Position numbers and translations under genes: made by a program. Positions 36,371-64,000 of a stretch of DNA of 64,000 nt are shown here, in pieces. Under the pieces are notes generated by a model. The model saw only the letters and a list, made by a program, of their open reading frames with translations. It made no database searches and was not told the DNA's origin. This DNA is from Macrostomum lignano (Eukaryota). Where the stretch lies: contig NIVC01000913.1 of the NCBI GenBank assembly GCA_002269645.1, positions 118,276 through 182,275 of the forward strand, in the 5' to 3' direction. Position 1 is the stretch's first letter; the number at the start of each line of letters is the position of its first letter.

Positions 36371-36676
36371 CCGGACAGAAAATTTGCAGCAAGACTTGAA
36401 TGGCGTCCGTCGCAGCTAGTCCTTCGCCACCTCATTAGCATATGATTAATTATGCCTCGGTTATTATCTCTCATCCAGGTTTCTCTCTTATAGTGCAGAA
36501 ATGAAAAGATATCCAGTTTATCTGTGATTTTAGACCTGTATAAATCTATGTACAAATTTTTGTGCCTCATGCAAAAGAAATACATAATAGTGCGCTTTGC
36601 ACTACTCAAAGAAGATTTCTACTCAGTAGATTATTGGAATTTCGAAATAATTTCGTTTTTTACTCTTTTTCTCTTT

Positions 36677-39600
36677 GCTAGCATCTGACACAGTCTTAGT
36701 CAGGCACTTTGCTAGCATCTGACACAGTCTTAGTCAGGCACTGTGCTAGCATCTGACACAGTCTTAGTCAGACACTGTGCTAGCAACTGACACAGTCTTA
36801 GTCAGACACTGTGCTAGCATCTGACACAGTCTTAGTCAGGCACTGTGCTAGCATCTGACACAGTCTTAGTCAGGCACTTTGCTAGCGTCTGACACAGTCT
36901 TAGTCAGACACTGTGCTAGCATCTGACACAGTCTTAGTCAGACACTGTGCTAGCGTCTGACACAGTCTTAGTCAGGCACTGTGCTAGCATCTGACACAGT
37001 CTTAGTCAGACACTGTGCTAGCAACTGACACAGTCTTAGTCAGACACTGTGCTAGCATCTGACACAGTCTTAGTCAGGCACTGTGCTAGCATCTGACACA
37101 GTCTTAGTCAGGCACTGCTAGCGTCTGACACAGTCTTAGTCAGACACTGCTAGCGTTTGACACAGTCTTAGTCAGACACTGCTAGCGTCTGACACAGTCT
37201 TATTCAGACACTGTGCTAGCATCTGACACAGTCTTAGTCAGACACTGCTAGCGTCTGACACAGTCTTAGTCAGACACTGCTAGCATCTGACACAGTCTTA
37301 GTCAGACACTGTGCTAGCATCTGACACAGTCTTAGTCAGGCACTGCTAGCGTCTGACACAGTCTTAGTCAGACACTGTGCTAGCATCTGACACAGTCTTA
37401 GTCAGAAACTGTGCTAGCATCTGACACAGTCTTAGTCAGACACTGTGCTAGCATCTGACACAGTCTTAGTCAGGCACTTTGCTAGCATCTGACACAGTCT
37501 TAGTCAGAAACTGTGCTAGCATCTGACACAGTCTTAGTCAGAAACTGTGCTAGCATCTGACACAGTCTTAGTCAGACACTGTGCTAGCATCTGACACAGT
37601 CTTAGTCAGGCACTGTGCTAGCATCTGACACAGTCTTAGTCAGACACTGTGCTAGCATCTGACACAGTCTTAGTCAGAAACTGTGCTAGCATCTGACACA
37701 GTCTTAGTCAGACACTGTGCTAGCATCTGACACAGTCTTAGTCAGAAACTGTGCTAGCATCTGACACAGTCTTAGTCAGGCACTGTGCTAGCATCTGACA
37801 CAGTCTTAGTCAGGCACTTTGCTAGCATCTGACACAGTCTTAGTCAGAAACTGTGCTAGCATCTGACACAGTCTTAGTCAGACACTGTGCTAGCATCTGA
37901 CACAGTCTTAGTCAGACACTGTGCTAGCATCTGACACAGTCTTAGTCAGAAACTGTGCTAGCATCTGACACAGTCTTAGTCAGGCACTGTGCTAGCATCT
38001 GACACAGTCTTAGTCAGACACTGTGCTAGCATCTGACACAGTCTTAGTCAGACACTGTGCTAGCATCTGACACAGTCTTAGTCAGACACTGTGCTAGCAT
38101 CTGACACAGTCTTAGTCAGAAACTGTGCTAGCATCTGACACAGTCTTAGTCAGAAACTGTGCTAGCATCTGACACAGTCTTAGTCAGACACTGTGCTAGC
38201 ATCTGACACAGTCTTAGTCAGACACTGTGCTAGCATCTGACACAGTCTTAGTCAGGCACTTTGCTAGCATCTGACACAGTCTTAGTCAGACACTGTGCTA
38301 GCATCTGACACAGTCTTAGTCAGACACTGTGCTAGCATCTGACACAGTCTTAGTCAGGCACTTTGCTAGCATCTGACACAGTCTTAGTCAGAAACTGTGC
38401 TAGCATCTGACACAGTCTTAGTCAGGCACTGTGCTAGCATCTGACACAGTCTTAGTCAGGCACTGTGCTAGCATCTGACACAGTCTTAGTCAGGCACTGC
38501 TAGCGTCTGACACAGTCTTAGTCAGACACTGTGCTAGCATCTGACACAGTCTTAGTCAGGCACTGTGCTAGCATCTGACACAGTCTTAGTCAGGCACTGC
38601 TAGCGTCTGACACAGTCTTAGTCAGACACTGTGCTAGCATCTGACACAGTCTTAGTCAGGCACTGTGCTAGCATCTGACACAGTCTTAGTCAGAAACTGT
38701 GCTAGCATCTGACACAGTCTTAGTCAGGCACTGCTAGCGTCTGACACAGTCTTAGTCAGACACTGTGCTAGCATCTGACACAGTCTTAGTCAGGCACTGT
38801 GCTAGCATCTGACACAGTCTTAGTCAGGCACTGTGCTAGCATCTGACACAGTCTTAGTCAGGCACTGCTAGCGTCTGACACAGTCTTAGTCAGACACTGT
38901 GCTAGCATCTGACACAGTCTTAGTCAGGCACTGTGCTAGCATCTGACACAGTCTTAGTCAGGCACTGCTAGCGTCTGACACAGTCTTAGTCAGACACTGT
39001 GCTAGCAACTGACACAGTCTTAGTCAGAAACTGTGCTAGCATCTGACACAGTCTTAGTCAGACACTGTGCTAGCATCTGACACAGTCTTAGTCAGACACT
39101 GTGCTAGCATCTGACACAGTCTTAGTCAGAAACTGTGCTAGCATCTGACACAGTCTTAGTCAGGCACTGCTAGCGTCTGACACAGTCTTAGTCAGACACT
39201 GTGCTAGCATCTGACACAGTCTTAGTCAGGCACTGTGCTAGCATCTGACACAGTCTTAGTCAGGCACTGTGCTAGCATCTGACACAGTCTTAGTCAGGCA
39301 CTGCTAGCGTCTGACACAGTCTTAGTCAGACACTGTGCTAGCATCTGACACAGTCTTAGTCAGGCACTGTGCTAGCATCTGACACAGTCTTAGTCAGGCA
39401 CTGTGCTAGCATCTGACACAGTCTTAGTCAGGCACTGCTAGCGTCTGACACAGTCTTAGTCAGACACTGTGCTAGCATCTGACACAGTCTTAGTCAGAAA
39501 CTGTGCTAGCATCTGACACAGTCTTAGTCAGGCACTGTGCTAGCATCTGACACAGTCTTAGTCAGACACTGTGCTAGCATCTGACACAGTCTTAGTCAGA

Positions 39601-41174
39601 CACTGTGCTAGCATCTGACACAGTCTTAGTCAGGCACTTTGCTAGCATCTGACACAGTCTTAGTCAGACACTGTGCTAGCATCTGACACAGTCTTAGTCA
39701 GACACTGTGCTAGCATCTGACACAGTCTTAGTCAGACACTGTGCTAGCATCTGACACAGTCTTAGTCAGGCACTGTGCTAGCATCTGACACAGTCTTAGT
39801 CAGGCACTGCTAGCGTCTGACACAGTCTTAGTCAGACACTGTGCTAGCATCTGACACAGTCTTAGTCAGAAACTGTGCTAGCATCTGACACAGTCTTAGT
39901 CAGAAACTGTGCTAGCATCTGACACAGTCTTAGTCAGACACTGTGCTAGCATCTGACACAGTCTTAGTCAGACACTGTGCTAGCATCTGACACAGTCTTA
40001 GTCAGGCACTTTGCTAGCATCTGACACAGTCTTAGTCAGACACTGTGCTTGCATCTGACACAGTCTTAGTCAGACACTGTGCTAGCATCTGACACAGTCT
40101 TAGTCAGACACTGTGCTAGCATCTGACACAGTCTTAGTCAGAAACTGTGCTAGCATCTGACACAGTCTTAGTCAGGCACTTTGCTAGCATCTGACACAGT
40201 CTTAGTCAGACACTGTGCTAGCATCTGACACAGTCTTAGTCAGACACTGTGCTAGCATCTGACACAGTCTTAGTCAGAAACTGTGCTAGCATCTGACACA
40301 GTCTTAGTCAGAAACTGTGCTAGCATCTGACACAGTCTTAGTCAGGCACTGTGCTAGCATCTGACACAGTCTTAGTCAGGCACTTTGCTAGCATCTGACA
40401 CAGTCTTAGTCAGACACTGTGCTAGCATCTGACACAGTCTTAGTCAGGCACTGTGCTAGCATCTGACACAGTCTTAGTCAGAAACTGTGCTAGCATCTGA
40501 CACAGTCTTAGTCAGAAACTGTGCTAGCATCTGACACAGTCTTAGTCAGGCACTGTGCTAGCATCTGACACAGTCTTAGTCAGGCACTTTGCTAGCATCT
40601 GACACAGTCTTAGTCAGACACTGTGCTAGCATCTGACACAGTCTTAGTCAGGCACTGTGCTAGCATCTGACACAGTCTTAGTCAGAAACTGTGCTAGCAT
40701 CTGACACAGTCTTAGTCAGGCACTGTGCTAGCATCTGACACAGTCTTAGTCAGGCACTTTGCTAGCATCTGACACAGTCTTAGTCAGACACTGTGCTAGC
40801 ATCTGACACAGTCTTAGTCAGGCACTGTGCTAGCATCTGACACAGTCTTAGTCAGAAACTGTGCTAGCATCTGACACAGTCTTAGTCAGAAACTGTGCTA
40901 GCATCTGACACAGTCCTAGTCAGACACTGTGCTAGCATCTGACACAGTCTTAGTCAGACACTGTGCTAGCATCTGACACAGTCTTAGTCAGGCACTGTGC
41001 TAGCATCTGACACAGTCTTAGTCAGGCACTTTGCTAGCATCTGACACAGTCTTAGTCAGACACTGTGCTAGCATCTGACACAGTCTTAGTCAGGCACTGT
41101 GCTAGCATCTGACACAGTCTTAGTCAGAAACTGTGCTAGCATCTGACACAGTCTTAGTCAGGCACTGTGCTAGC
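36677..41174. repeat. 34-bp satellite, ~130 copies
   Basis: Unit GCTAGCATCTGACACAGTCTTAGTCAGACACTGT with 32-bp variants; no unique spacers. Confidence 0.98.
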
Positions 41175-41834
41175 AAAGTACGCGAGTAATAATGTTATTC
41201 GAAATTTTATAAGTTTTCAAGCAGTATTCAGCAGAAAAGCTGTAGATACTACTTTTCCATTAGACTGCAAGTAGTGCAGTGCAGTCAGCGCAATGATAGA
41301 ACAGTTACAGCATCAAAAACGGTGCTCAGTTTGTATTTTACACGAGCCTACAAAAAGCAAAAACTCAAAATTAGAACTCAGAGAAAAGCTGTGCGAATCG
41401 AAGTACCACAAACTTTCGCTTTGGTGTGCAGAATTTGAGTAGCAAAAATGAGGCAAACAATTGAAAGTAGGAAGACAGCTCAGATTAGAAGCGTGACAGT
41501 AAAATGATCTGACAGTATGTCTGTGACACTGTGAAATACAGTTTCAGAATGAAATTTTCTGCCGAAAACAAAGCCGTCTTTTGCGCAAAGACAAATTTTT
41601 ATAAAGTGACAAATTGAATATGAAAACTGTAACATCCTGCAGGAAGTCCCCATTCTGGCAGGAGCAAATTCTAAGAAAAGCAGATTCTCGAAAAAGTAAA
41701 TTTTGGAAAAAGTAGATTCTGAAAGAAGCAGATTCCAGAATATCCTGACAGAAGATTCTGACAAAAGCGTGTTCTTGCAGAAGAAGATTCTGGAAAACTT
41801 TTATTCTGGAAGAATCAACTTTAAATAAAGATTC

Positions 41835-43183: not shown

Positions 43184-46100
43184 TCACTGGCAGCCGCATG
43201 CCAGCGCCACCATGTCGTCGTACTGCTTCAGCACCACTCGCTCGTTGTCGTCATAGTACAGCATGTTGAGAACGTCCAGCTTGCTGGGGACGCAGCAGGG
43301 CTTCGGCACGGGGCTGCTGATGATGGGGCCCAGGTGGTTCATGATGCTCTGCACCACCGCGTGGTTGCTGGGGTGGAACTGCTGGCCCAGCGGGAACGGG
43401 CACTGCCCGCTGCAGAAGAAGGCGTTGAAGCCCGACGGCCCGATGATCCACTCGTCCCAGCCGACCGTGGCGAAGTCCACCTGCATGGGGTAGCGCCGGC
43501 AGCTCACGCTGTGCATCGGAGAAGTCGCCGACTCGGAACTGGCGGCGGCGGCGGCAGATTCTGCGGTGCCGACTGAGCGGCGACTTCGCCGATGGCGACT
43601 GGACGGGATAGCGAAGCCGCCGCTGTAGACGCTGGCGTAGCGATTCGGGTCGAAAGAGTCGAATGCTCGGTTGAAGGAGTTGTTCTCTGCGCAGGTGTCG
43701 TTTGAGGTGTGCGGGTTTTATGCAAAATCCCTGACCTAAATTTGACCCAAAACTGAGCCAACCCTGAACGAACTCTAATAAAACTTGACTCAACCCCTGA
43801 CCAAGTATTGACCCAAACTAAATGGGACCGTGACCCAACTCTGACCTAGCCTTGATCCTGACATCCAGACTTAAAATGGAACTTTGACCCAAAACTCATC
43901 CAAACCTGCCCAACCCTGATTCAAGTCTGACCCAAGTCTGACCCAAACGTGACTCAACCTTGACCCAAACCTGATTCAACCTTGACCCAACCCTGACTCA
44001 ACTCTGACCCAAGTCTGACCCAAACGTAACTCAACCTTGACCCAAACCCGATTCAACCTTGATCCAACCCTGACGCAGCCCTAATGAAACCATGACTCAA
44101 CCCTGACCCAACCCTGACCCAACCCTGACCAAACCCTGACACAACCCTGACCCAACCCTGACCCAACTCTGACCCAACCCTGACCCAACCCTGACCCTGA
44201 CCCAGCCTTAATGAAACCTTCACCCAACACTGACCCAACCCTGATCCAATCAAGACCTGGGCTCACCTAGTTCGGGCCGGTTATGCTTTCTCTCGCCATC
44301 GGAAGCGTACACCATCAGTGCCGGCTGCAGGACGTCCCTATTCTCGCCGCGTTGGACGAAGCCGAGCCGGCTGGGCGGGACCGGGTCGCCATTCGCGTAG
44401 TAGGCAAACACGGCGAGACCTACGGGATTCCGGGGTTCGTGGCGTGACACTTTGGCTTATCAGTTAGCCCTGAAACAACACCCCCTTCGCTGCCAGCCAA
44501 TCAGCGTTCGAGTACCGGAGCTTTTCAATCCCCCCTACCTCAGACTGCACCCACCCTTCCGCTGCCAACCAATCAGAGTTCGATTACCGGAGCTTTTCAA
44601 CCCCCCCCCCTACCCCAGACTGCACCAACTCCCTCCGCTGCCAGCCAATCAGAGTTCGAGTACCGGAGCTTTTCAATCCTTCTACCCCAGTCTGCACCAA
44701 CCCCCTCCGCTGCCAGCCAATCAGAGTTCGAGTACCGGAGCTTTTCGATCCCCCTACCCCAGTCTGCACCAACCCCCTCCGCTGCCAGCCAATCAGAGTT
44801 CGAGTACCGGAGCTTTTCAACCCCCCCTACCCCAGACTGCACCAACTCCCTCCGCTGCCAGCCAATCAGAGTTCGAGTACCGCAGCTTTTTAATCCTTCC
44901 ACCCCAGTCTGCACCAACCCCCTCCGCTGCCAGCCAATCAGAGTTCGAGTACCGGAGCTTTTCAATCCCCCTACCCCAGTCTGCACCAACCCCCTCCGCT
45001 GCCAGCCAATCAGAGTTCGAGTACCGGAGCTTTTCAATCCCCCTACCCCAGTCTGCACCAACCCCCTCCGCTGCCAGCCAATCAGAGTTCGAGTACCGGA
45101 GCTTTTCAATCCCCCTACCCCAGTCTGCACCAACCCCCTCCGCTGCCAGCCAATCAGAGTTCTTGAAGGCAGCAAACAGACTCACCGTGATTCGAGCCGC
45201 CCGAGGACTCCAACCAGCTCAATGCGGCCTGGCTGACCTGGAACACAACCCAGCCGCGGTAATCGACGGGCAGCAGCTTCTGCGACAGCAGGATGTTGCC
45301 GTAAGGTGTGCTGCGACGCCTAGGATCTGTTACCTGGTACAGCTTCAACTGGAAACGGTGAGGCATAAATTCACATATTTTACATGGAGATACTGATAAG
45401 AAAAGTTATAGTGTAGATTCCGAGAAAGCCTCCCAGAGCAACAAATTCACATAATCCGTTTTGTTCACAGAACCAGATAGAGCTGAACTGTTACATAAGT
45501 ATAATGAGTCACATTCATACCCAATACACAGCTATCAAAGAAGTGTCTAAGGCTATATCCGAAATTCACACATCACAGATTCCATATCCCCGATTCTCAG
45601 GATCCCAGATCAAAGAATCCTGACTTACAGAATCCCGATTCACAAAAGCCTAATTCACAGAATCTCGATTCACAGAGTTCCAGTTTACAGAATCCAGATT
45701 CACAGAGTCCTGATTCGCAGAATCCCGATTCACAGAATTCGAATTCACAGAATCCTGATTCATAGAACCCTTTTTCACGGAATTTCGATTCACAGAAAGC
45801 TTTTTCACAGAATCCTAATTCACAGAATCCCAATTCACAGAATCCCAATTCACAGAATCCTAATTCACAGAATCCCAATTCACAGAATCCCAATTCACAG
45901 AATCCCAATTCACAGAATCCCAATTCACAGAATCCTCATTCACAGAATCCTAATTCGCAGAATCCTAATTCACAAAATCCTAATTCACAGAATCCCAATT
46001 CACAGAATCCTAATTCACAGAATCCCAATTCACAGAATCCTAATTCACAGAATCCCAATTCACAGAATCCCGATTCAAATAATCCTAATTCACAGAATCC

Positions 46101-48681
46101 TAACTCACAGAATCCCGGTTTGCAAAATCCCAATTCCCAGAATCCCAATTCCCAGAATCCCAATTCACACAATTCTGATTCGCAGAATCCTGATTAACAA
46201 CGCCACAGAAGCTTCACCTTGATAATTCTAGATGGCGGCGGACGCTGCGCGGGCGCCTCACGACGATGCCGCCTGGAACGGACGGAAGGCGCTCTGAACA
46301 GGTGCAAGTCGGCATACCGGATGTCACTCTGGTAAGGCAGTCTGGTGAGGTTGTACGAGTAGAAAGTCTGACTCCCTGGCGCTGCGGGAGATACAAAATT
46401 TTGGGACGTGGCAATTATAAAATCATTGAATCATGGCAATTAAAACGGCTATAGGGGCGCTCACGGAAATCGAACCAATGGACATTAACCGCATAGAGAC
46501 AGCACCCCAATCTCATGTCAGACAGGTGCAATCTCAGAATCACAGGTGCAATCTCACAATCAGACAGGTGCAATCTCAGTCAGACAGGTGCAATCTCAGT
46601 CAGACAGGTGCGATCTCAGAATCACAGGTGCAATCTCACAATCAGACAGGTGCAATCTCACAATCAGACAGGTGCAATCTCACAATCAGACAGGTGCAAT
46701 CTCACAGCCAGACAGGTGCCACTGTGAGATCAGTCAGACAGGTGCAATCTCACAGTCAGACAGGTGCCACAATCTCACAGTCAGACAGGTGCCACAAGCT
46801 CACAGTCAGACAGGTGCCACAAGCTCACAGTCAGACAGGTGCCACAATCTCACAATCAGACAGGTGCAATCTCACAGCCAGACAGGTGCCACTGTGAGAT
46901 CAGTCAGACAGGTGCAATCTCACAGTCAGACAGGTGCCACAATCTCACAGTCAGACAGGTGCCACAATCTCATAGTCAGACAGGTGCCACAAGCTCACAG
47001 TCAGACAGGTGCCACAAGCTCACAGTCAGACAGGTGCCACAAGCTCACAGTCAGACAGGTGCCACAAGCTCACAGTCAGACAGGTGCCACAATCTCATAG
47101 TCAGACAGGTGCCACAATCTCACAGTCAGACAGGTGCCACAAGCTCACAGTCAGACAGGTGCCACAAGCTCACAGTCAGACAGGTGCCACAATCTCACAG
47201 TCAGACAGGTGCCACAAGCTCACAGTCAGACAGGTGCCACAAGCTCACAGTCAGACAGGTGCCACAATCTCACAGTCAGACAGGTGCCACAAGCTCACAG
47301 TCAGACAGGTGCCACAAGCTCACAGTCAGACAGGTGCCACAAGCTCACAGTCAGACAGGTGCCACAATCTCACAGTCAGACAGGTGCCACAAGCTCACAG
47401 TCAGACAGGTGCCACAAGCTCACAGTCAGACAGGTGCCACAAGCTCACAGTCAGACAGGTGCCACAATCTCACAGTCAGACAGGTGCCACAATCTCACAG
47501 TCAGACAGGTGCCACAAGCTCACAGTCAGACAGGTGCCACAAGCTCACAGTCAGACAGGTGCCACAAGCTCACAGTCAGACAGGTGCCACAAGCTCACAG
47601 TCAGACAGGTGCCACAAGCTCACAGTCAGACAGGTGCCACAAGCTCACAGTCAGACAGGTGCAATCTCACAGTCAGACAGGTGCCACAAGCTCACAGTCA
47701 GACAGGTGCCACAAGCTCACAGTCAGACAGGTGCCAAAATCTCATAGTCAGACAGGTGCCACAATCTCACAGTCAGACAGGTGCCACAATCTCATAGTCA
47801 GACAGGTGCAATCTCACAGTCAGACAGGTGCCACAAGCTCACAGTCAGACAGGTGCCACAAGCTCACAGTCAGACAGGTGCCACAAGCTCACAGTCAGAC
47901 AGGTGCCACAAGCTCACAGTCAGACAGGTGCCACAATCTCACAGTCAGACAGGTGCCACAAGCTCACAGTCAGACAGGTGCCACAAGCTCACAGTCAGAC
48001 AGGTGCAATCTCACAGTCAGACAGGTGCCACAAGCTCACAGTCAGACAGGTGCCACAAGCTCACAGTCAGACAGGTGCCACAAGCTCACAGTCAGACAGG
48101 TGCCACAAGCTCACAGTCAGACAGGTGCCACAAGCTCACAGTCAGACAGGTGCCACAAGCTCACAGTCAGACAGGTGCCACAAGCTCACAGTCAGACAGG
48201 TGCCACAAGCTCACAGTCAGACAGGTGCCACAATCTCATAGTCAGACAGGTGCCACAAGCTCACAGTCAGACAGGTGCCACAAGCTCACAGTCAGACAGG
48301 TGCCACAAGCTCACAGTCAGACAGGTGCCACAAGCTCACAGTCAGACAGGTGCCACAATCTCATAGTCAGACAGGTGCCACAAGCTTACCCCAGTCAGCG
48401 TAGGCCACCACCGAGTCCGAATGATACGGCACCGCCCGGACGGCCCGGCCGTCCCTCTCCGACACCGAGTCGTACAATCGACGCAGGAACAGCGGCGCTG
48501 CGGTGCTGCTTCGCAGGTGTGCTGGCACCTTCTTGATGCCAAGCAGCTTGGCCAAGCTGTTCAACGGATCGTTCCGAGGCCGCGGGCGCGACGCTGTCGG
48601 TGACGTCAGCACGGACCGAGTGAGGAGAAGAAGACCCAGCAGTGGAATGAGTAGGGAAAGCAGGAGTGGAAGTTTAGCCAT
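43184..48681 (-). CDS. admp: Anti-dorsalizing morphogenetic protein (TGF-beta/BMP family ligand), 5 exons, ~434 aa
   Basis: Exons 48390-48681 (signal peptide MAKLPLLLSLLIPLLGLLLL), 46218-46381 (YNLTRLP..ADLHLFR), 45186-45348, 44267-44449 (acceptor least certain), 43184-43686. Furin site RRSRR followed by a 7-Cys mature domain with ADMP-type motifs CPFPLGQ..PSNHAVVQSI and VVLKQYDDMVA..CGC. Total 1305 nt in phase. Confidence 0.9.
43740..44255. repeat. Degenerate ~11-bp array (CTGACCCAACC; admp intron 4)
   Basis: Direct reading. Confidence 0.85.
44480..45166. repeat. 72-bp tandem array, ~10 copies (admp intron 3)
   Basis: 24-aa ORF periodicity; each unit contains CCAATCAG. Confidence 0.95.
45590..46195. 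repeat. 15-bp tandem array (CAGAATCCCAATTCA; admp intron 2)
   Basis: Direct reading. Confidence 0.95.
46515..48386. repeat. 25-bp tandem array, ~75 copies (admp intron 1)
   Basis: Unit CAGTCAGACAGGTGCCACAAGCTCA. Confidence 0.97.
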
Positions 48682-48979
48682 TGAGCAAACTAAACTGTGG
48701 CAGTTTCTATCGATTCTCTTCAGCGAATATAATTCAGGAGAAATGTGAATCGAGACGAGCAGAAATGTTATTGAGATATAAGCTGCTGTGTCGTCACAGG
48801 ATACGCAAGAGTAGCGAGCGGTTTCTCTATTTTTCTCTGCCTCTCTTTCCGCAGATTTTTCTCTTCCAGTCCCCCTGTCAATTTAGGCAGCTCCGCGTCT
48901 GCCGGGCCATTGTCTCCGTGTATCTGTCTATATCATTGCGGCCGAAGCTCGGGGCGGAGGGGGTTGGCCGGCCCCAGCT

Positions 48980-48995
48980 GGCGCCAGAGTGTCTG
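48980..48995 (+). promoter_or_regulatory. Candidate BMP-responsive (Mad/Medea/Schnurri) element upstream of admp
   Basis: GGCGCC-AGAGT-GTCTG is an exact match to GRCGNC(N5)GTCTG, ~300 bp 5' of the admp ATG. Confidence 0.6.
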
Positions 48996-50055
48996 CCGAG
49001 TCGCCCCAAGTGAGAGAGAGGAATTCCTCTGCCGAGAATAATAATAATAATTCTAGCAGGCTCCGAGGCTCCAGGTGCCGTATATGCTCAATAACAGGAG
49101 CGACGATCGTTAGTCTGCGCGTGCTGATTCTCCGACTAAATGCGGCTAGGGCCAGCATCACGCGCCTCATCGTTTTGAAGAGAAATTCGAGACCACAGCA
49201 TTTAGAGGGTAGGGGGTGGGCAATTCAGGCGGTGAGGCACGTTTTCCAGTTGAGGTGGGACAGGAGAGAGAGAGAGGGCTGAGCTGCGGCCTTATGGCGG
49301 CAACGAAGACAGGGGCTTCCCAGGTTTGCCAACACCGACTAAAACTCTTCATCATCTCTTTATTTCACTTTTTTCTCAAGCAATGGGAGACTTCAAGCCC
49401 TGTTCAGGCCAATCTCTCTCAGGGCCCCCTTCAGCGAGAGGAGCTCCCACGGTGTCGCGCCGGAGACCCAATACGAGAAGGACCAACTAACTTTCACTTT
49501 TAGTCTCTAAATAAGCGATCGAGTTTTCCTATTTTCAAGCGCAGTTTCCTTGGCAACTCAAGTTGCCGTTCTGAAACCGGTTTGCTCTCCATCTGAAGCT
49601 TTACGACCCGTCGTACGAGTCTGTTTTATGTTTATTGCGAGGTGCGAAAATCGTCCAGTTGAAGAAAAAAGCTTTCCTGGTGTGACAAAAAAGTCAGATT
49701 ACCAAACCGCCCTCCAACTAACGTACCGAATTCAAACGCCCAAGCTCTCAAGGTTGAGCCCTATCGCCCGCCCAGTTGCAAGAAAATGCAATTTATGGTT
49801 AGGCAGCTTCAAGCCATAATAAGGCAACCCCTGCAATAGAAAAACAATGGAGAAAGAGAACAAAGAATTAGGCGATAGTAACGAAAACCGCCATCAAGCA
49901 CGCAACGGTGCCAAAATGGAATTCTGTTATTTTATTAGCGCAGGCCTCGGTGCTTATTTGATGGCTTCTGATAATAAATTAGCTTTGTAGTTTCTAAAAA
50001 TTGTTGCTTAGCATGCTACTGTGAGTAGCAAGTCCGACTGTGGTTAATCGCATCG

Positions 50056-53000
50056 CTATGGCTGAAGGCGAGCCGCCTCAGCGGCAGTCTGCTGGCATCG
50101 CTGAATCCGTCGCATCGTCAGTTCGGCCAGCAGAGCCAGAAAGCCCAGGCAGACGCCGAGAATGGGCAGCACAAAGATGCCGCTGATGGAGCTGAGCTTC
50201 AGACCTGCGGTTGAGGTTTTGCCAATCAGAGGTTGGAATCGAACGTGAGGAAATGAGGGCTAATCTTGGCCTAGTCTTTAAAATGTTGCTTGGTGCATGC
50301 AAACGGGAGTCAACGTGTCGCGTCGCGTCGTGTCGTGGTTGCATACCAGCGGCCCAGGCTCGATTCCAAGTGCAGTCACATTAGTATGGGGCTAAATTGG
50401 AATCTCGGCTTGGCTCTGCTCGTGCAATTAACGACCCTGAGGGCCAACCCCAAGGCACAGGGAAGTGTACATGCTTAACGATACATAAAGTTAGGGCCGC
50501 TGTACACTCCTGTGTGGGTGTGTGCTTGTGCGTGTGACTGCGTACGTATGCGCGCTTTTGTGCCTGCTCAGGGGAGTCGGCGAAATGGGCAGTAATGCCT
50601 CTCGCCGGTTGTGGAACAATGTCGCTTAAACTGCGCCAGGGTAGCATCACAGTTGACATGACACTAGATAAGAACTCGACATGATCAATCAGGCCTAGCA
50701 CTTGATTTCCATGCTTACCAATTGACCTGGCATCAGCTGGACAATTGACTTCGCCGACGCTGTTCCACCACTGCATTTTTAGTGTCTCCAGCGTTCGATC
50801 CTGCTGCATCTGGAGGATTCTGAAACGCATTAAGCAAGTTTTAAGAGCGATCAGTTTGAAATGAAAAAGCCAATCTGACTCTTTGCAGGAAGCTTAATTT
50901 ACACTCAGCAACAGTCCTGAGTTCCACCCTCCAAGCGAGATGAAAATTTTCTCAATTATTGCGACAACTTCTCACTCACAATTCGACTCTCAAGTTATGC
51001 AACAAAGCCGCCGCGATGAAGGGAAAGTTGATTGAATCAGTAATAAACGTCTTTTAAACGTATTTGTTATGCAATATGCAGTTGGAATCTCAATGCTTAA
51101 TAACCCGTGTGAGATCCCCTCGCATGCAGAAGTGCGGCGACTCTGCGGGGCATCCCCAGGGGAAGCTGCTGCCAAGCGTTTTCAATGGCATGACGCAGCT
51201 CCGCAACATTCTGTGTTGAATTCTCTTTTCGAATGCTGCATTTTAGGAAGTCCCACACATGCTCGATGGGATTCATGTCTGAGGACCGGGGAGGCCAGCG
51301 CAAAGTGCGCAGCTGTAGCTGTTCTTTCAATTCTCGCGTGCTGTAAGTTGCGTCACTCGCAATAAGTGAGAAAAATTAATCTCGCTTGGAGGGTGAAACT
51401 TTTGACTGTTGCTGAGTAACTGATCCCAGTCCAATGACAGAACATACGCCATGTCGAACTCCTTGGTTAATAGCGAGCCTTTCTGTAGAACTATTCCATA
51501 CGGACGCGAGCTCAGGACCTCGCCAACTGTGCGCAAGCAACAATCGCGACTGGCATAGTATCTGGCCAAGGGAGTGTCCATGAACACGGCCCAGGAGCCG
51601 GTACGGGCCAAGGACACAGCCTCCTGTGTGCTGTTTGCCAGGCCCCACTCCTTCATGCGGCCGAGCATTCTGGTGAAGCGCTCTTCGATCGGGTATTCCC
51701 ACACTGCAGCTCCGTGTGTTAGAGGTGCTCCGTTGCCTGGAGAGGCGTTACTAAAGGCGTTGAGTCAGGGTGGCCACAACCATTTTGCAACAACTATCCA
51801 GCTGAGACAGTTGAATGGAGTTCAAATAGACAGACAATAAAAAAAATACACTATTGTAGTAACACTTGAAGGTTGAGGTCCCTTTTTTGAAGAGAATCAA
51901 CAGTGATAAGAAAGCTCACCATTATCTTCGATTGAACTCCGCCAGATGTTGAAAAATTTCGACTCGATGTCAGCCATGCGCTCAAAGAAGTCGTGTCCTA
52001 TTGTGTTCCTCTGGACCGTGTACTGAGAATACGGGTGAATTGAAGTAAATTTATGATGCTAAGCAAGTAGGGAAATGGTAGGTCAAGAAACAGTGGGAGC
52101 TTAACGCACCTTAATATCAGTTTGAGCTGCTAATCGCCTCAGGGTTGTCACAGATGACGCTGTTAGCTGCGAGGCGGTAAGCAAAGCTGCCAGATTGGCT
52201 GTGTACAGGGCGTGCATGATGCAGCACAGAAGCCAAAACCCGGCAACAATGAGTCTTGCCGAAGGCGCTCGTGGGTCGAAGCTGTCCCCGGCTTGGATCA
52301 ATGCGCCCAAAGAGTACCAGAGACTCTCCCCGATGCTGAATACCTGCAGTTCGGAGTTCCCGCTATTGACCTTTGACTTTCAATCTGCTTCTGTGCTAGT
52401 TATCTGCTTCTGTGTTAGTTATCTGCTTCTGTGTTATCTGCTTCTGTGTTATCTGCTTCTGTGTTATCTGCTTCTGTGTTATCTGCTTCTGTGTTATCTA
52501 TCTGCTTCTGTGTTAGTTATCTGCTTCTGTGTTAGTTGTCTGCTTCTGTGTTAGTTGTCTGCTTCTGTGTTATCTGCTTCTGTGTTAGTTGTCTGCTTCT
52601 GTGTTAGTTGTCTGCTTCTGTGTTAGTTGTCTGCTTCTGTGTTATCTGCTTCTGTGTTAGTTAGCTGCTTCTGTGTTATCTGCTTCTGTGTTAGTTGTCT
52701 GCTTCTGTGTTAGTTGTCTGCTTTTGTGTTAGTTGTCTGCTTCTGTGTTATCTGCTTCTGTGTTAGTTGTCTGCTTCTGTGTTAGTTGTCTGCTTCTGTG
52801 ATAGTTATCTGCTTCTGTGTTAGTTGTCTGCTTCTGTGTTAGTTGTCTGCTTCTGTGTTAGTTGTCTGCTTCTGTGTTAGTTATGTGCTTCTGTGTTAGT
52901 TGTCTGCTTCTGTGTTAGTTATGTGCTTCTGTGTTAGTTGTCTGCTTCTGTGTTAGTTGTCTGCTTCTGTGTTAGTTGTCTGCTTCTGTGTTAGTTATCT

Positions 53001-57858: not shown

Positions 57859-59596
57859 GTATATTGTTTGAAACGAAAGGTGTGAGTAAGCGAATTTATA
57901 AATTATTTGTCAAGTAGCTGGTGAGTAAGTATTTTGTATGTACAGAGTAGTTGGAGGTTGATAGTCCGTAGGGCGGGGCGAAGACCAATAGGCAGAAAAC
58001 AAAATATAATTGAATGAGTACTGGTTACAACAAGGTCAGTGCTCTCTCACTCAGAATACACGGAGAACATGGCCTGCACCACTGTGTTGGAGTTGCGTAT
58101 TAAGGGTGGGCGACTGGTTTTTTTATGTACAAGGCTTCTAAGATCTTGAGCTCGTGATCAGATGGGCATTGATCAATGATTTTAAAACGTTCTTCAGGTG
58201 TACAATTAGAGCAGCTGTTACATTCCAAAAGGTGGGTTTGGATGGCCGACGGTTTGAGCCAGTGCTCCCTGGTTCTAGTGTGCAGGTGTCTTTTGGTCTT
58301 CACCACGTAGGAGACGCTCTGGTCAACAGAGCAGTTGAAACAGTAGACAACACCTGCACGCAGAGCACGGGGTACACGTGACTTTAACCGACCGACAAAA
58401 CTGCCAACTTTGGAACAGCGGAAAATAACGCGAATTTGGCTGTTGAAAGAGTTGTGAAATAATTTGCAAATCCTGTTTTTGAAGGTGAGAGAAGGATGGC
58501 CAAAGAAAGGGAGAATGAGGGTTGGTTCACTAAGGTCAATGTGGTCAGGTTTGGAAACTTTTTGGTGATTCACTCTTTCAGAAATGAATTTGTGGATGTT
58601 GTGGTGGATGAAGGCAGATGGGTAACCGTTTTGTTGGAGCATTTTGGTCAGGAATCTAATTTCTTGGTCAAAGTTGATCCAGGAGTTGCAGACAGTGTAG
58701 GCTCTGTGAAGCAAGCATCTGATCAGACCAGATTTCCACTGTCTGGGGCACACGGCATAAAAGTTGAGAATGAGATTGGTGAAGGTTTTTTTGCGGAAAA
58801 CTTTGGTGAAAAGGTTCCCACCGCTGAGATCGATGTCAAGGTCAAGGAACGGAAGTTTATGGTCAGTAGCAATCTCATTGGTGAACTTAATATTGTCATG
58901 GGTGGAATTGATAGACTGGAAGAAATGGTCAAGTTTGTTCTTGCTTTCAAAGATGGCAAACGTTTCATCGACATAGCGTCTGTAAAATTTGGGCGCACAG
59001 TCAAGGGACATCCAGTTGTTGGTTTCCCAATGAGTCAAGCAGATTTCAGCCAGAGTAGGGGCCAGCGGACTTCCCATGGCGCAGCCCTCAATTTGCCGGT
59101 AGTATTTACTGTTGAACATGAAGATTCCAGAGGTCGCAAAGCCAAGAAGTTTTTTAAAAGAGTCCTTAGACAAAGAAATGGAGGTAGGATTGCGTTTAAA
59201 CACTTATTCAGTGGCGAGGTCAATAGCAAGTTTCAGGGGATGTTAGTAAAGAGTGAAACAACATCGAAACTGCAGAGAATGTCAGACTTCTTGATGTCAG
59301 AGCACGAATTTTGAAGATCTTTCAGAAAAGCGCTGTTGGATTTCGAGGTGAATTCAGTAGAAATGCAAGGTTTGATGAGCGAGTCCAGGTATTTAGCAAG
59401 CTCGTATTCGGCGGTGTTGACCATGGAAACAATTGGTCTGAGGGGTTTTTCTGGTTTGTGCACCTTGCAGACCCCGTAGAGCTGACCAGGTTGGCTACCG
59501 CAGGGTAAGATGCGCTGGCGCTGGTACGTGCAAGGATCAAATGTGTTGTTTGACATGATCCTTGCACACTCACACCTTTCGTTTCGAACAATATAT

Positions 59597-59628
59597 CTGA
59601 CGATGCACCTTGGTGTGCGAAACGCGTC
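59597..59628 (+). ncRNA. Minimal type I hammerhead ribozyme core (inverted 5' pLTR)
   Basis: Identical 32-nt core CTGACGATGCACCTTGGTGTGCGAAACGCGTC on the plus strand. Confidence 0.7.
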
Positions 59629-59922
59629 GAAAAAACCACATGTTGATTTTGGGATTTCTTCTTATTTTACTTGCCAAGCGAGCCACTTTACCTGATTACA
59701 AACAAAAATTTACTACAATAAGAGATTGTTCAAATTTTGTCACAACACTGGGCAGAGCAGCTCTCGTGCTAATTTGGTGTCAGTTCACGGAATTTCACCT
59801 GAAGCCAGTGGTATTCGTGCCCATGAGGCAGAGAGTGCATGCAAGCCTGACGATGGGAAAGTCTAGGCCGCTGTGTACAACCAGTGTGAGCGGTTCCTGC
59901 GTTCTTATCCGTGTCCTGGGGG

Positions 59923-61691: not shown

Positions 61692-63122
61692 ATGCTGCAA
61701 AAGTCGTCTCCGAAAATGAAATATTTGGCCGTCGTGATCCTTCTATTAACACTTGGACTGAGTTATGTGAGTTTTAAATGACGAGATTCTCCATGTCTGT
61801 TTAATGCTTTTGTTCAATACATTAAATGCTCTGCGGGTACCAAACATTAAATTAAAATGAATGCCTGTGCTAACATCTTATTCTTTCTAGGCCTCTGCCG
61901 ATTGCATTATGTATGATGAGTGCTCTCGTAGCCCAACGGATAATCCAATCAATTGCCGATACAACGGGCCCGCGAAGCCTCTTAACAACCAAAAGTCTTT
62001 GTCTCTGCTACGATCATTTTGCCCGGAAATCGCTTCTGGAAGTTCAGGGGACGTCGTGACTTGCTGCTCAGAGCGTCAGATTGAAACGTTAAGCATCCAA
62101 ATGGATCGCGCAGGCCTTCTACTTAGGCGCTGTCCAGCGTGTTGGAAAAATTTTCGATCCATGTTCTGCAACATGGCTTGCTCGCCGAACCAAAGCTTGT
62201 ACCTACAGGCGACCAGCTTCGACGAATCCGTAAATACAGTGACAAGCGTGAACTACAACATCAGCAGCAACTTTGCTCACACATTCTTCAACAGCTGCAA
62301 AGGCGTTAGTCACGGCAACGGCAAAGCTATATCAGCAATGTGCGGATCTGTCAGCGTGGAATCGTGCACCGTGAAAGACGTGTTTAAGTTTTTGGGTAGT
62401 CCAGCCGAAAATCCGTATGCTCCGTTCGACATAAAATTCTCCCTTGAGGACCAATGCTTCACTATCGATGGTAAAATGCACTGCCCAATGAATGAAAGCT
62501 CAGTTCAGTGTCATCTTGGCGATCGAGAGCGAGGAGTTGCTGCCTGCTCCTGTAGCGATTGTCAAGCTGTCTGCCCGAAGAAGCCAGAGACTCCAAACGA
62601 TCCGAAACCCTGGCAGGTGCTGGGAATCGACGGCTGGTACATTGTCATGGCTGCCATCTACGTCTCATTCTTAGTCGTCTTCGCCGCCTGGAACATTTAT
62701 TTCTTTGCTCAAACGCACCGTAAGAACTTAAACTCTCGAGTTAGCACATCTTCCAAGGATTCGAATACTGCATACTCAGCAGCGTCCTCCGAAAAGGTTA
62801 CATCCACCGAATTGACGTACGGCCTCACCTCGCCGAGTAGCCAGGCCTTCCTAACTGACGGCAGTCGCTTGTCCGATACCGAAATCGACTGCTCAGATCG
62901 CGTCAGCGGGCAGATTGAAGCTCGAATCGAAGCCGCCTTTACTAGCTGGGGTCTGCTCGTGGCGAAGCACCCGGTGCTCGTCATCATGCTGAGCTTTGTA
63001 GTTTGCATAGCCCTGTCCTGCGGCGTTCTGTTCTTCCAAGTCACTACCGACCCTGTTGAGCTATGGAGCTCCCCGCAGTCTACTGCCCGCCAACAGAAGG
63101 CCTTTTTTGACAAAAACTTTGG
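61692..63122 (+). CDS. NPC1: Niemann-Pick C1 family sterol transporter, first two coding exons (gene continues beyond 63122)
   Basis: Exon 61692-61766 is a signal peptide ending tat|gtgagt. Exon 61891-63122 encodes the Cys-rich N-terminal domain (CIMYDEC, RCPACWKNFRSMFCNMACSPNQS, CSCSDCQAVC), TM1, and TTDPVELWSSPQSTARQQKAFFDKNFG, ending gg|gtaagc. Confidence 0.95.
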
Positions 63123-64000
63123 GTAAGCAAATTGTAACTTTCCTTTGTGAATACTTACAACTTCATCTGTCTTCTTAATTCTGCCTTCTACATTAAGGGT
63201 CAGCCATTACCTTGAGTTGTGCTTAAGCGCTGTTTTCGAAAGCAAATTATTAACAATGCTAGACCGGCTTTGACTAGAATTTTCTCTTTCCCTCTCTCTT
63301 TTCTTCTCTAAGCTGGCAGTCCCAGCCTGTGCGCAGTGTGTCTATAGTAGTTCGTGGCGCGCCGCGTTTCGCTGCATCGGCATGATTCCTTTGCAAGCGA
63401 CGAGGGTACGAGTATAAGAAATTTAGCGCGGCGCGCAAATATCGAATGCATACAGCGCAAGCTAAAGCTTTTTTCAGCTGCAGTTAGTCACCCCACGGTT
63501 CGATCAGTCCCAGGACTTTGGGGAGGGAAGGGCGTAGACTGCAGGACTGCTGTATGAATTCTCTCTTCAGCTATTGAGGGGTTCTGTGGGCAACCCGCTA
63601 TTATGCGTGAAAATTATTTAACGTATTATATATTGTAACTTTAAACACGATATATAAGATTGTAGGGGGGAGTCACTTAAGTGCGTAAAAATTGTAAGGT
63701 AGATTAATATATTGGTAGACGGCTTCTGGTCTGTAATGTTCAGATATGAGACATTTTCAATAGCCTCGCATTACAATGGGTGGGATCTAGCAGTCAAACC
63801 CTGTGTACAGAGAGTTGGGTGAGGAGTCTTACCCACCTGACACTATGAGCGTAGACCCACCCATGACCCATCATTAGACTACCTGTCTCGGCGGGGGCGG
63901 TCATGCCACACGGCCCCCTTCCCACCTCAGCGTGCATCAGAAAAAATTAGGCCATTCTGAGCGGCCGCAATCCATCGTAATGTTTTCTTTGCAGCATTCC

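What the first reader, a model, noticed from the sequence alone, without database searches (positions are those of the whole stretch)
48886..48995. Perfect BMP silencer/BRE motif, plus a one-mismatch partner, just upstream of admp
Seen: TGGCGCC-AGAGT-GTCTG (core 48980-48995) about 300 bp 5' of the ATG, and GGCAGC-TCCGC-GTCTG (48886-48901) with the same 5-nt spacing and one mismatch. Established: GRCGNC(N5)GTCTG recruits Mad/Medea/Schnurri, and Admp is repressed by BMP signalling in the self-regulating dorsoventral circuit. With equal base frequencies, an exact match is expected about 0.005 times in the 1.4-kb upstream interval. Inference: this is a candidate direct cis-link for BMP repression of Admp in a protostome.
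Basis: partly seen in the sequence, partly recalled or inferred. Interest (0 to 1): 0.72.

Follow-up and report, generated by a model that had tools for sequence, protein, structure and literature searches.

The report
Smad-site cluster upstream of flatworm admp
About 300 bp upstream of the admp gene of the flatworm Macrostomum lignano lies a perfect BMP/Smad response motif with two near-copies beside it, far more than chance predicts, so BMP signalling may act directly on this feedback gene as it does in zebrafish; this has not been tested.

Summary
GGCGCCAGAGTGTCTG lies at 48980-48995, and the one-mismatch copy at 48886-48901. I found a third one-mismatch copy at 49102-49117. All three keep an exact GTCTG, the exact 5-nt spacer and the same orientation. 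They lie 220-436 bp upstream of the ATG (48681, minus strand) of a five-exon TGF-beta gene.

The gene is a true ADMP orthologue from Macrostomum lignano. Its best named relatives are Schmidtea Admp-1a/1b and fish, sea-star and acoel ADMPs.

Chance is unlikely. An exact site appears in 0.2% of shuffles of the 1.4-kb intergenic region. Three or more sites appear in 0.04%.

The mechanism is only partly supported:
- The same 16-mer is a silencer in Drosophila, where repression needs Schnurri zinc fingers 6-8.
- It is an activating 'ID-like' element in vertebrate cells, so sequence alone does not give the sign.
- A repressive reading is favoured because BMP inhibits admp in planarians, and because a Smad1-bound GGCGCC in the proximal zebrafish admp enhancer directly represses that gene.
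- The motif is absent from trematode, clam and bird admp loci.
- A GGCGCC-N5-GTCT lies 838 bp upstream of sea-star ADMP1.

Verdict: a credible, testable new instance of a known kind of element, not a demonstrated one.

The parts
48980..48995 (+). Exact Smad composite site GGCGCC-AGAGT-GTCTG. It matches the Drosophila silencer consensus GRCGNC(N5)GTCTG and the vertebrate 'ID-like' BRE GGCGCC-N5-GTCTG. It starts 299 bp upstream of the admp ATG. Read in the gene's direction it is CAGAC-N5-GGCGCC.
   Evidence: It is the only GGCGCC in the intergenic region.
48886..48901 (+). Near-site A, GGCAGC-TCCGC-GTCTG. It has one mismatch in the GC half, an exact GTCTG and an exact 5-nt spacer. It is at -220 from the ATG.
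49102..49117 (+). Near-site C, GACGAT-CGTTA-GTCTG. It has one mismatch in the GC half, an exact GTCTG and an exact 5-nt spacer. It is at -436 from the ATG.
48966..48987 (.). GC-rich context of the exact site: GGCCGGCC (48966-48973, two GGCCG-type 5-bp GC motifs), the CAGCTG E-box (48975-48980) and the 10-bp palindrome CTGGCGCCAG (48978-48987).
   Evidence: Read directly. Palindrome I10.
48682..50055 (-). Intergenic region between the stop codon of the upstream glutamate-receptor gene and the admp ATG. It contains the neighbour's AATAAA (its first base, read on the minus strand, at 49936) and TATA-like hexamers 99 and 50 bp upstream of the admp ATG (48775-48780 and 48726-48731).
   Evidence: No tRNA or Rfam match.
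48390..48681 (-). admp exon 1: ATG, signal peptide and start of the propeptide.
46218..46381 (-). admp exon 2.
   Evidence: AG/GT splice sites, reading frame kept.
45186..45348 (-). admp exon 3.
44267..44419 (-). admp exon 4.
43184..43686 (-). admp exon 5: RHRRSRR furin site, the mature seven-cysteine TGF-beta domain and the stop codon.
   Evidence: PF00019, E = 2.8e-32.

Best explanation
The region 220-436 bp upstream of the Macrostomum lignano admp start codon carries a small cluster of Smad composite sites. One is perfect (GGCGCC-N5-GTCTG). Two have a weakened GC half but an exact GTCTG and the exact 5-nt spacer.

The most likely function is a docking module for the BMP-activated Smad1/5-Smad4 complex. 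One Smad would bind the GC half and another the GTCT half. The 5-nt spacer fixes the geometry that lets a cofactor join.

Through this module BMP signalling would act directly on admp transcription. The most probable sign is repression, which would close the BMP-ADMP negative feedback loop in cis.

Shown here: the sequence, its position, its improbability by chance and the identity of the gene.

Inferred: Smad binding, the sign, and the cofactor (Schnurri-like or other).
For: - Exact consensus at 48980-48995 and two one-mismatch sites with the same grammar and orientation.
- Chance probability 0.002 for the exact site and 0.0004 for three or more sites in the intergenic region. It is 0.0025 for such a cluster anywhere in the window and below 5e-5 with local composition. 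No such pairing occurs in 309 kb of other real DNA.
- The sites are not a duplicated repeat.
- The gene is ADMP. The best named hits in an exhaustive search are Schmidtea Admp-1a and fish, sea-star and acoel ADMPs. It joins a flatworm ADMP clade with 78.5% bootstrap.
- BMP inhibits admp in planarians and represses it in vertebrates and sea-urchin admp1.
- In zebrafish, a Smad1-bound GGCGCC between -633 and -210 of admp is required for BMP-dependent repression. This is the same core motif in the same distance range as here.
- The strict 5-bp spacing, function in either orientation and G at linker position +2/+3 match the functional grammar measured in reporter assays.
- A GGCGCC-N5-GTCT lies 838 bp upstream of sea-star ADMP1, against about 0.009 expected over the four loci tested.
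Against: - There are no binding, expression or perturbation data for M. lignano.
- One locus in one genome. Neither the diverged second copy in the same species (P0002) nor any other Macrostomum species could be examined.
- The motif is absent within 10 kb upstream of admp in a trematode, a clam and a bird, and from three further partial loci.
- The same 16-mer activates transcription in vertebrate cells, and some admp paralogues are BMP-activated.
- Composite motifs explain under 1% of SMAD1-bound regions, and authors in the field warn that repression cannot be inferred from sequence alone.
- The transcription start site is unknown, so 'proximal promoter' is an inference from distance to the ATG.
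Confidence: 0.5

Rival explanations
1. Chance occurrence. The sites have no regulatory role, and BMP control of admp in this animal, if any, is indirect through a BMP-induced repressor or through elements elsewhere.
For: Only one locus was examined. The motif is not found around admp in trematodes, a clam or a bird. A second exact site at 63718 lies by an NPC1-like gene, with no evident link to BMP signalling, so exact sites do arise by chance. One-mismatch sites occur at the expected rate across the window as a whole.
Against: The exact site has P about 0.002 and the three-site cluster P about 0.0004 in the region specified in advance. The cluster is also significant window-wide (P = 0.0025). 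The gene is one for which direct Smad repression through GGCGCC has been shown in zebrafish.
Confidence: 0.25
2. A functional Smad element of the opposite sign. It would be an activating BRE of the ID/Vent2 type, through which BMP or ADMP signalling induces this admp gene, as for admp2 in sea urchins and hemichordates.
For: GGCGCC-N5-GTCTG is the minimal BMP-activated element in human cells and works in both orientations. Vertebrate Schnurri lacks the zinc fingers that make the site a silencer. admp2 is under positive BMP control.
Against: BMP inhibits admp in planarians, the closest studied relatives. The protein groups with Schmidtea Admp-1a. The zebrafish admp GGCGCC site is repressive. All three sites have GTCT rather than the GNCV of the Drosophila activating element, and the activating-element consensus is not matched.
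Confidence: 0.15
3. A promoter element read by other factors, unrelated to BMP. Examples are a bHLH factor at the abutting CAGCTG E-box or a zinc-finger factor at the CTGGCGCCAG palindrome.
For: The E-box overlaps the first G of GGCGCC, and the site sits in a GC-rich patch with GGCCGGCC. Planarian admp is expressed in body-wall muscle, where E-box factors act.
Against: This does not explain the exact GTCTG at exactly 5 nt, nor the two further GTCTG sites with the same spacing to GC-rich half-sites. An E-box input could equally work alongside a Smad input.
Confidence: 0.1

Closest known systems
Zebrafish admp proximal enhancer (-633 to -210 from the ATG) with a Smad1-bound GGCGCC (Yan et al. 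2019, PMC6989304)
   Same: Same gene family, same core hexamer GGCGCC and the same distance range from the start codon (here -304 to -299). In zebrafish the site binds purified Smad1. Changing it to AAAAAA derepresses the reporter and abolishes its response to BMP inhibition.
   Different: Whether the zebrafish site is followed by N5-GTCT could not be checked, because the supplementary figure is not held. Here nothing has been tested experimentally. Here there are also two flanking near-sites. The animal is a protostome.
Drosophila Dpp silencer element, GRCGNC(N5)GTCT(G), bound by pMad/Medea/Schnurri (brk, bam and others)
   Same: Exact match to the consensus, including the 5-nt spacer and the T of GTCT. 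Several sites lie close together upstream of a gene expected to be BMP-repressed, as at brk.
   Different: Silencing depends on Schnurri zinc fingers 6-8. Whether a flatworm has such a protein was not testable here. Two of the three sites break positions the consensus requires.
Vertebrate 'ID-like' heterocomposite BRE, GGCGCC-N5-GTCTG (ID1-4, Xvent2 and others)
   Same: Identical grammar: palindromic GC site, strict 5-bp spacer, GTCTG, and G at linker position +2.
   Different: Those elements activate transcription on BMP stimulation. Repression is expected here from planarian and zebrafish data.
GGCGCC-ACGCA-GTCT, 838 bp upstream of Patiria miniata ADMP1 (L009:9163-9177)
   Same: Same composite, upstream of an admp orthologue. 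It is the only GGCGCC in that 1.5-kb upstream region. Sea-urchin admp1 is BMP-repressed.
   Different: It lacks the final G. It has the opposite orientation relative to the gene, has no flanking near-sites and is untested. It was found after trying several motif variants.

Membership tests
ADMP subfamily of BMP ligands (the gene) | TGF-beta propeptide plus a C-terminal seven-cysteine TGF-beta domain after a furin site | tested here: met
   PF00688 (E = 1.6e-14) and PF00019 (E = 2.8e-32); RHRRSRR site.
ADMP subfamily of BMP ligands (the gene) | Closest relatives are named ADMPs, not BMP2/4 or BMP5-8 | tested here: met
   Exhaustive HMMER search: Schmidtea Admp-1a at E = 9e-62 over the full length; Spinachia ADMP, Patiria ADMP1, Isodiametra ADMP and Hofstenia ADMP among the top hits. 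Fish BMP2b scores lower (153 bits). The NJ tree places it with the flatworm ADMPs (78.5% bootstrap), apart from the BMP2/4 and BMP5-8 clades.
Drosophila-type Dpp silencer element (pMad/Med/Shn) | Sequence GRCGNC(N5)GTCTG with an exact 5-nt spacer | tested here: met
   48980-48995 matches exactly. The two flanking sites each fail at one required position.
Drosophila-type Dpp silencer element (pMad/Med/Shn) | Recruitment of Schnurri through zinc fingers 6-8 | not testable with these tools
   Needs a flatworm Schnurri sequence and binding assays. Vertebrates lack these fingers. The papers found with the terms 'Schnurri' and 'planarian' gave no evidence on this.
Drosophila-type Dpp silencer element (pMad/Med/Shn) | The nearby gene is repressed by BMP signalling | not tested
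   No M. lignano expression data. Published for planarians, vertebrates and sea-urchin admp1.
Drosophila-type Dpp silencer element (pMad/Med/Shn) | Sites conserved in related species | tested here: inconclusive
   Absent from trematode, clam and bird admp loci, and present only at sea-star ADMP1. No close relative or homeologous copy could be fetched.
Vertebrate 'ID-like' BMP response element | GGCGCC-N5-GTCTG, strict 5-bp spacer, either strand | tested here: met
   grammar as defined in PMC11907993.
Vertebrate 'ID-like' BMP response element | BMP-induced activation of the linked gene | not tested
   No functional data. Activation is disfavoured by planarian and zebrafish admp data.
Drosophila activating element GGCGCCA(N4)GNCV | V (not T) at the last position | tested here: not met
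   The site reads GGCGCCA-GAGT-GTCT, with T at the V position. No match in the window.

The most novel reading that the evidence does not exclude
Direct repression of admp by BMP-activated Smads, through a GGCGCC-type composite site in the proximal promoter, is an ancestral bilaterian cis-regulatory link. It would survive in zebrafish (shown experimentally), a sea star and a flatworm. In the flatworm it would use the silencer grammar (5-nt spacer, GTCT) with a Schnurri-like co-repressor, so that grammar would predate arthropods.
Probability: 0.15. Interest if true: 0.75.

Novelty: new member of a known kind. Interest (0 to 1): 0.45.

Why it matters
The BMP-ADMP pair is the core of the self-regulating dorsoventral circuit. 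Opposite transcriptional control of the two ligands lets embryos and regenerating animals buffer BMP levels. A direct Smad site that represses admp has been shown only in zebrafish.

A matching element in a flatworm would have two consequences. It would suggest that the wiring itself, and not only the genes, is ancient. It would also give a short, well-defined sequence to test in M. lignano, which is described as a flatworm amenable to transgenesis (abstract of PMC5173321).

The site could also help settle whether the Drosophila silencer grammar works outside arthropods. If the site proves inert, it becomes a useful warning about inferring regulation from a perfect consensus.

Tried and rejected
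- Fetching other M. lignano copies of the locus by exact protein look-up failed. I tried the UniRef fragment P0001, the exon-5 ORF, the garbled second-copy model P0002 and the exon-1 ORF.
- Word-indexed homologue searches returned mostly unnamed last-exon fragments and no Macrostomum relative.
- The plaice locus L004 held only the last exon, so its promoter could not be examined.
- The trematode models in L001 and L002 are partial, so their start codons are unknown.
- The Gavino and Reddien 2011 paper is not held. The zebrafish supplementary figure with the probe sequences is not held either.
- The idea that the three sites are copies of a repeat unit or transposon was rejected: their flanks do not align.
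- A hidden RNA gene in the intergenic region was rejected: no Rfam or tRNA match.
- The Drosophila activating-element reading was rejected on sequence.
- I considered the 25-bp tandem array in intron 1 (71 copies of CAGAC plus CAGGTG) as a Smad-site array. I set it aside because such arrays are found throughout the window and its GC-like half-site is not at 5-nt spacing.
- PDB comparison alone could not separate ADMP from BMP2 (138.7 bits to BMP2), so I used full-length hits and a tree instead.

Full report
**What is at the coordinates.** The window reads ...CCCCAGCTGGCGCCAGAGTGTCTGCCGAG... The sequence GGCGCCAGAGTGTCTG is at 48980-48995 on the plus strand, and GGCAGCTCCGCGTCTG is at 48886-48901. 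A pattern search finds only two exact matches to GRCGNC(N5)GTCTG in the 64 kb, this one and one at 63718. Shuffles of the window predict 0.18. When the spacer is varied from 0 to 15 nt, the other fifteen lengths give only two hits in total. The exact motif is therefore rare in this sequence.

**The gene.**
- The minus strand carries a clean five-exon gene: 48681-48390, 46381-46218, 45348-45186, 44419-44267 and 43686-43184. All introns are GT-AG and the product is 424 aa.
- The product has a signal peptide, a TGF-beta propeptide, an RHRRSRR furin site and a seven-cysteine TGF-beta domain.
- A UniRef entry from Macrostomum lignano is 100% identical over 253 residues, which identifies the organism as this free-living flatworm.
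- In an exhaustive HMMER search of 1.84 billion representatives, the top hits after the species' own copies are a clam protein and Schmidtea mediterranea Admp-1a (E = 9e-62, aligned over the full length). Every top hit that carries a curated name is an ADMP: Spinachia, Patiria ADMP1, Isodiametra and Hofstenia.
- Named BMP2b, BMP2/4 and BMP7-like proteins rank lower.
- A neighbour-joining tree of the mature domain puts the protein with Schmidtea Admp-1a and trematode sequences (78.5% bootstrap). This group sits inside the ADMP clade, in which human BMP3 also nests, apart from the BMP2/4 and BMP5-8 clades.
- Lapraz et al. 2015 already included an M. lignano sequence in their ADMP subtree.

**The upstream interval.**
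- The next gene upstream on the same strand is an ionotropic glutamate receptor (Lig_chan). Its last exon ends with a stop codon at 50056-50058.
- An AATAAA follows about 120 nt downstream of that stop codon; read on the minus strand its first base is at 49936.
- It holds no tRNA or Rfam match.
- TATA-like hexamers lie 99 and 50 bp upstream of the ATG. The transcription start site is not known.

**Is it more than chance?**
With the region's own composition it is 0.0056 per 1.5 kb.
- It is 0.0020 in 5000 dinucleotide-preserving shuffles of the region and 0.0016 in shuffles of the local 300-bp GC-rich patch.
- The one-mismatch partner is uninformative alone, since the window holds six sites with at most one mismatch and 6.1 are expected.
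All three are on the same strand, and each has an exact GTCTG and an exact 5-nt spacer. The variation is confined to the GC half.
- Three or more such sites in the intergenic region occur in 0.04% of shuffles.
- A cluster of three within 250 bp anywhere in the window occurs in 0.25% of shuffles, and in none of 20,000 shuffles of the local patch.
- In 309 kb of real DNA from nine other admp loci there are 21 such sites, and no two fall within 250 bp.
- The flanks of the three sites do not align, so they are independent sites and not copies of a repeat.

**What the motif is known to do.**
- In Drosophila, GRCGNC(N5)GTCT(G) binds a pMad-Medea trimer and recruits Schnurri through zinc fingers 6-8, which silences the gene. 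Vertebrate Schnurri proteins lack those fingers (PMC10853822).
- In human cells, GGCGCC-N5-GTCTG is the minimal BMP-activated 'ID-like' composite. The 5-bp spacer is obligatory, the element works in both orientations, and G at linker position +2 or +3 is favoured (PMC11907993). The site here has the linker AGAGT.
- At brinker and Xvent2, the same Smad geometry recruits Schnurri, which sets the direction of regulation (PMC11785376).
- The sequence therefore predicts Smad docking well, but it does not predict the sign.
- The site does not fit the Drosophila activating element GGCGCCA(N4)GNCV, because of the T in GTCT.

**What is known about admp.**
- BMP represses admp in Xenopus and zebrafish, and represses admp1 in sea urchins. 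Sea-urchin admp2 is BMP-activated (PMC4600745; PMC11226491).
- The closest precedent is zebrafish. Yan et al. 2019 (PMC6989304) mapped an admp enhancer to -633 to -210 from the start codon. They showed that purified Smad1 binds a GGCGCC there, and that changing it to AAAAAA derepresses the reporter and removes its response to BMP inhibition.
- The M. lignano GGCGCC lies at -304 to -299. It is the only GGCGCC in the interval.
- The direct cis-link is therefore already established in a vertebrate. The flatworm site would be a protostome counterpart.

**Conservation test.**
- No DNA from a second M. lignano copy or from another Macrostomum species could be obtained. A diverged second copy does exist (P0002).
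- I fetched admp loci from Fasciolopsis and Echinostoma (partial models), Calicophoron, the clam Mercenaria, the bird Aegotheles, a plaice (last exon only), an unidentified invertebrate (two contigs) and the sea star Patiria.
- None has the strict motif. Apart from the sea-star locus, none has even GNCGNC-N5-GTCT anywhere.
- The bird, clam and trematode loci have no GGCGCC at all in the 1.5 kb upstream of the ATG.
- The exception is Patiria ADMP1, with GGCGCCACGCAGTCT 838 bp upstream of the ATG. It is again the only GGCGCC in that interval. About 0.009 such sites are expected over the four non-Macrostomum upstream regions.
- This match is suggestive. It came from a relaxed motif, one of several I tried, and it is in a deuterostome, not a spiralian.
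It remains undone for close relatives.

**Weighing the explanations.**
- The likelihood of such a cluster by chance is about 1e-3 or less. The gene is one where direct Smad repression through the same hexamer is documented. I therefore consider a functional Smad-binding module more likely than not.
- Repression is the more probable sign, given the planarian genetics, the zebrafish precedent and the GTCT-type half-sites. Activation cannot be excluded.
- A Schnurri-dependent mechanism is the least secure step.
- My estimates are about 0.5 for direct BMP-dependent repression, 0.15 for an activating Smad element, 0.25 for chance and 0.1 for an unrelated factor site.
- The abutting CAGCTG E-box (48975-48980) may be a separate input. 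Planarian admp is expressed in muscle.

**Verdict.**
- This is a new, statistically solid instance of a known kind of element at a gene where it makes biological sense, in a flatworm described as amenable to transgenesis (abstract of PMC5173321).
- It is a well-founded hypothesis, not a demonstrated mechanism.
- The vertebrate precedent makes it more credible and less novel.

Noticed in passing
window 46631-48386 (admp intron 1): A 25-bp tandem array of 71 copies (unit CAAGCTCACAGTCAGACAGGTGCCA). Each unit carries a CAGAC Smad-binding core and a CAGGTG E-box, and the array begins only four bases downstream of exon 1 (48390). It is probably one of this genome's many satellites, but it puts about 70 Smad-type half-sites inside the gene.
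   Followed up: partly
window 1-64000: The window is extraordinarily rich in tandem repeats: 80 Tandem Repeats Finder rows and dozens of separate arrays with periods of 4 to 217 bp, several longer than 1 kb (for example 36676-41175, 133 copies of a 34-mer).
   Followed up: no
window 63718-63733: The only other exact silencer-consensus match in the window (GACGGCTTCTGGTCTG). It lies about 600 bp downstream of an exon encoding a Niemann-Pick C1 N-terminal domain (61909-63126, plus strand). It has no evident link to BMP signalling and is probably a chance match.
   Followed up: partly
protein P0002 (UniRef, M. lignano): A second M. lignano protein model shares long identical stretches with this ADMP, interrupted by frame-shifted segments. 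This points to a diverged second genomic copy with a faulty gene model. Its upstream DNA would be the best conservation test.
   Followed up: partly
L009:9163-9177 and L009:5035-5049 (Patiria miniata ADMP1 locus): GGCGCCACGCAGTCT lies 838 bp upstream of the ADMP1 start codon. An activating-element-type match (GGCGCCAGTCTGGCG) lies about 5 kb upstream.
   Followed up: partly
L003:2240-2255 (bird Aegotheles ADMP locus): GGCTCC-N5-GTCTG on the minus strand, about 7.8 kb upstream of the ADMP start codon. It uses the same GGCTCC hexamer as the non-palindromic GC site tested in human reporter assays.
   Followed up: no
window 58100-59661 (minus strand): Two adjacent ORFs of a retroelement. There is a weak reverse-transcriptase hit (RVT_1, E = 0.0017, below the curated cut-off). 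A C-terminal part looks to me like a GIY-YIG-type endonuclease, as in Penelope-like elements; this last point is my reading and was not tested.
   Followed up: partly
window 51100-51375 (minus strand): A fragment of a DDE_3 (Tc1/mariner-type) transposase. It appears to lie in an intron of the glutamate-receptor gene upstream of admp.
   Followed up: partly
window 21990-26675 (minus strand): Exons of a sodium:solute symporter (SSF/SLC5-type) gene, interrupted by tandem arrays.
   Followed up: partly
window 48975-48980: A CAGCTG E-box overlaps the first base of the GGCGCC site. Planarian admp is expressed in body-wall muscle, so a muscle bHLH input next to the Smad site is conceivable.
   Followed up: no
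protein P0179 (Clonorchis sinensis, named 'bone morphogenetic protein 5/6/7/8'): In the neighbour-joining tree this trematode protein groups with the flatworm ADMPs and not with the BMP5-8 references, so its database name is probably wrong.
   Followed up: no
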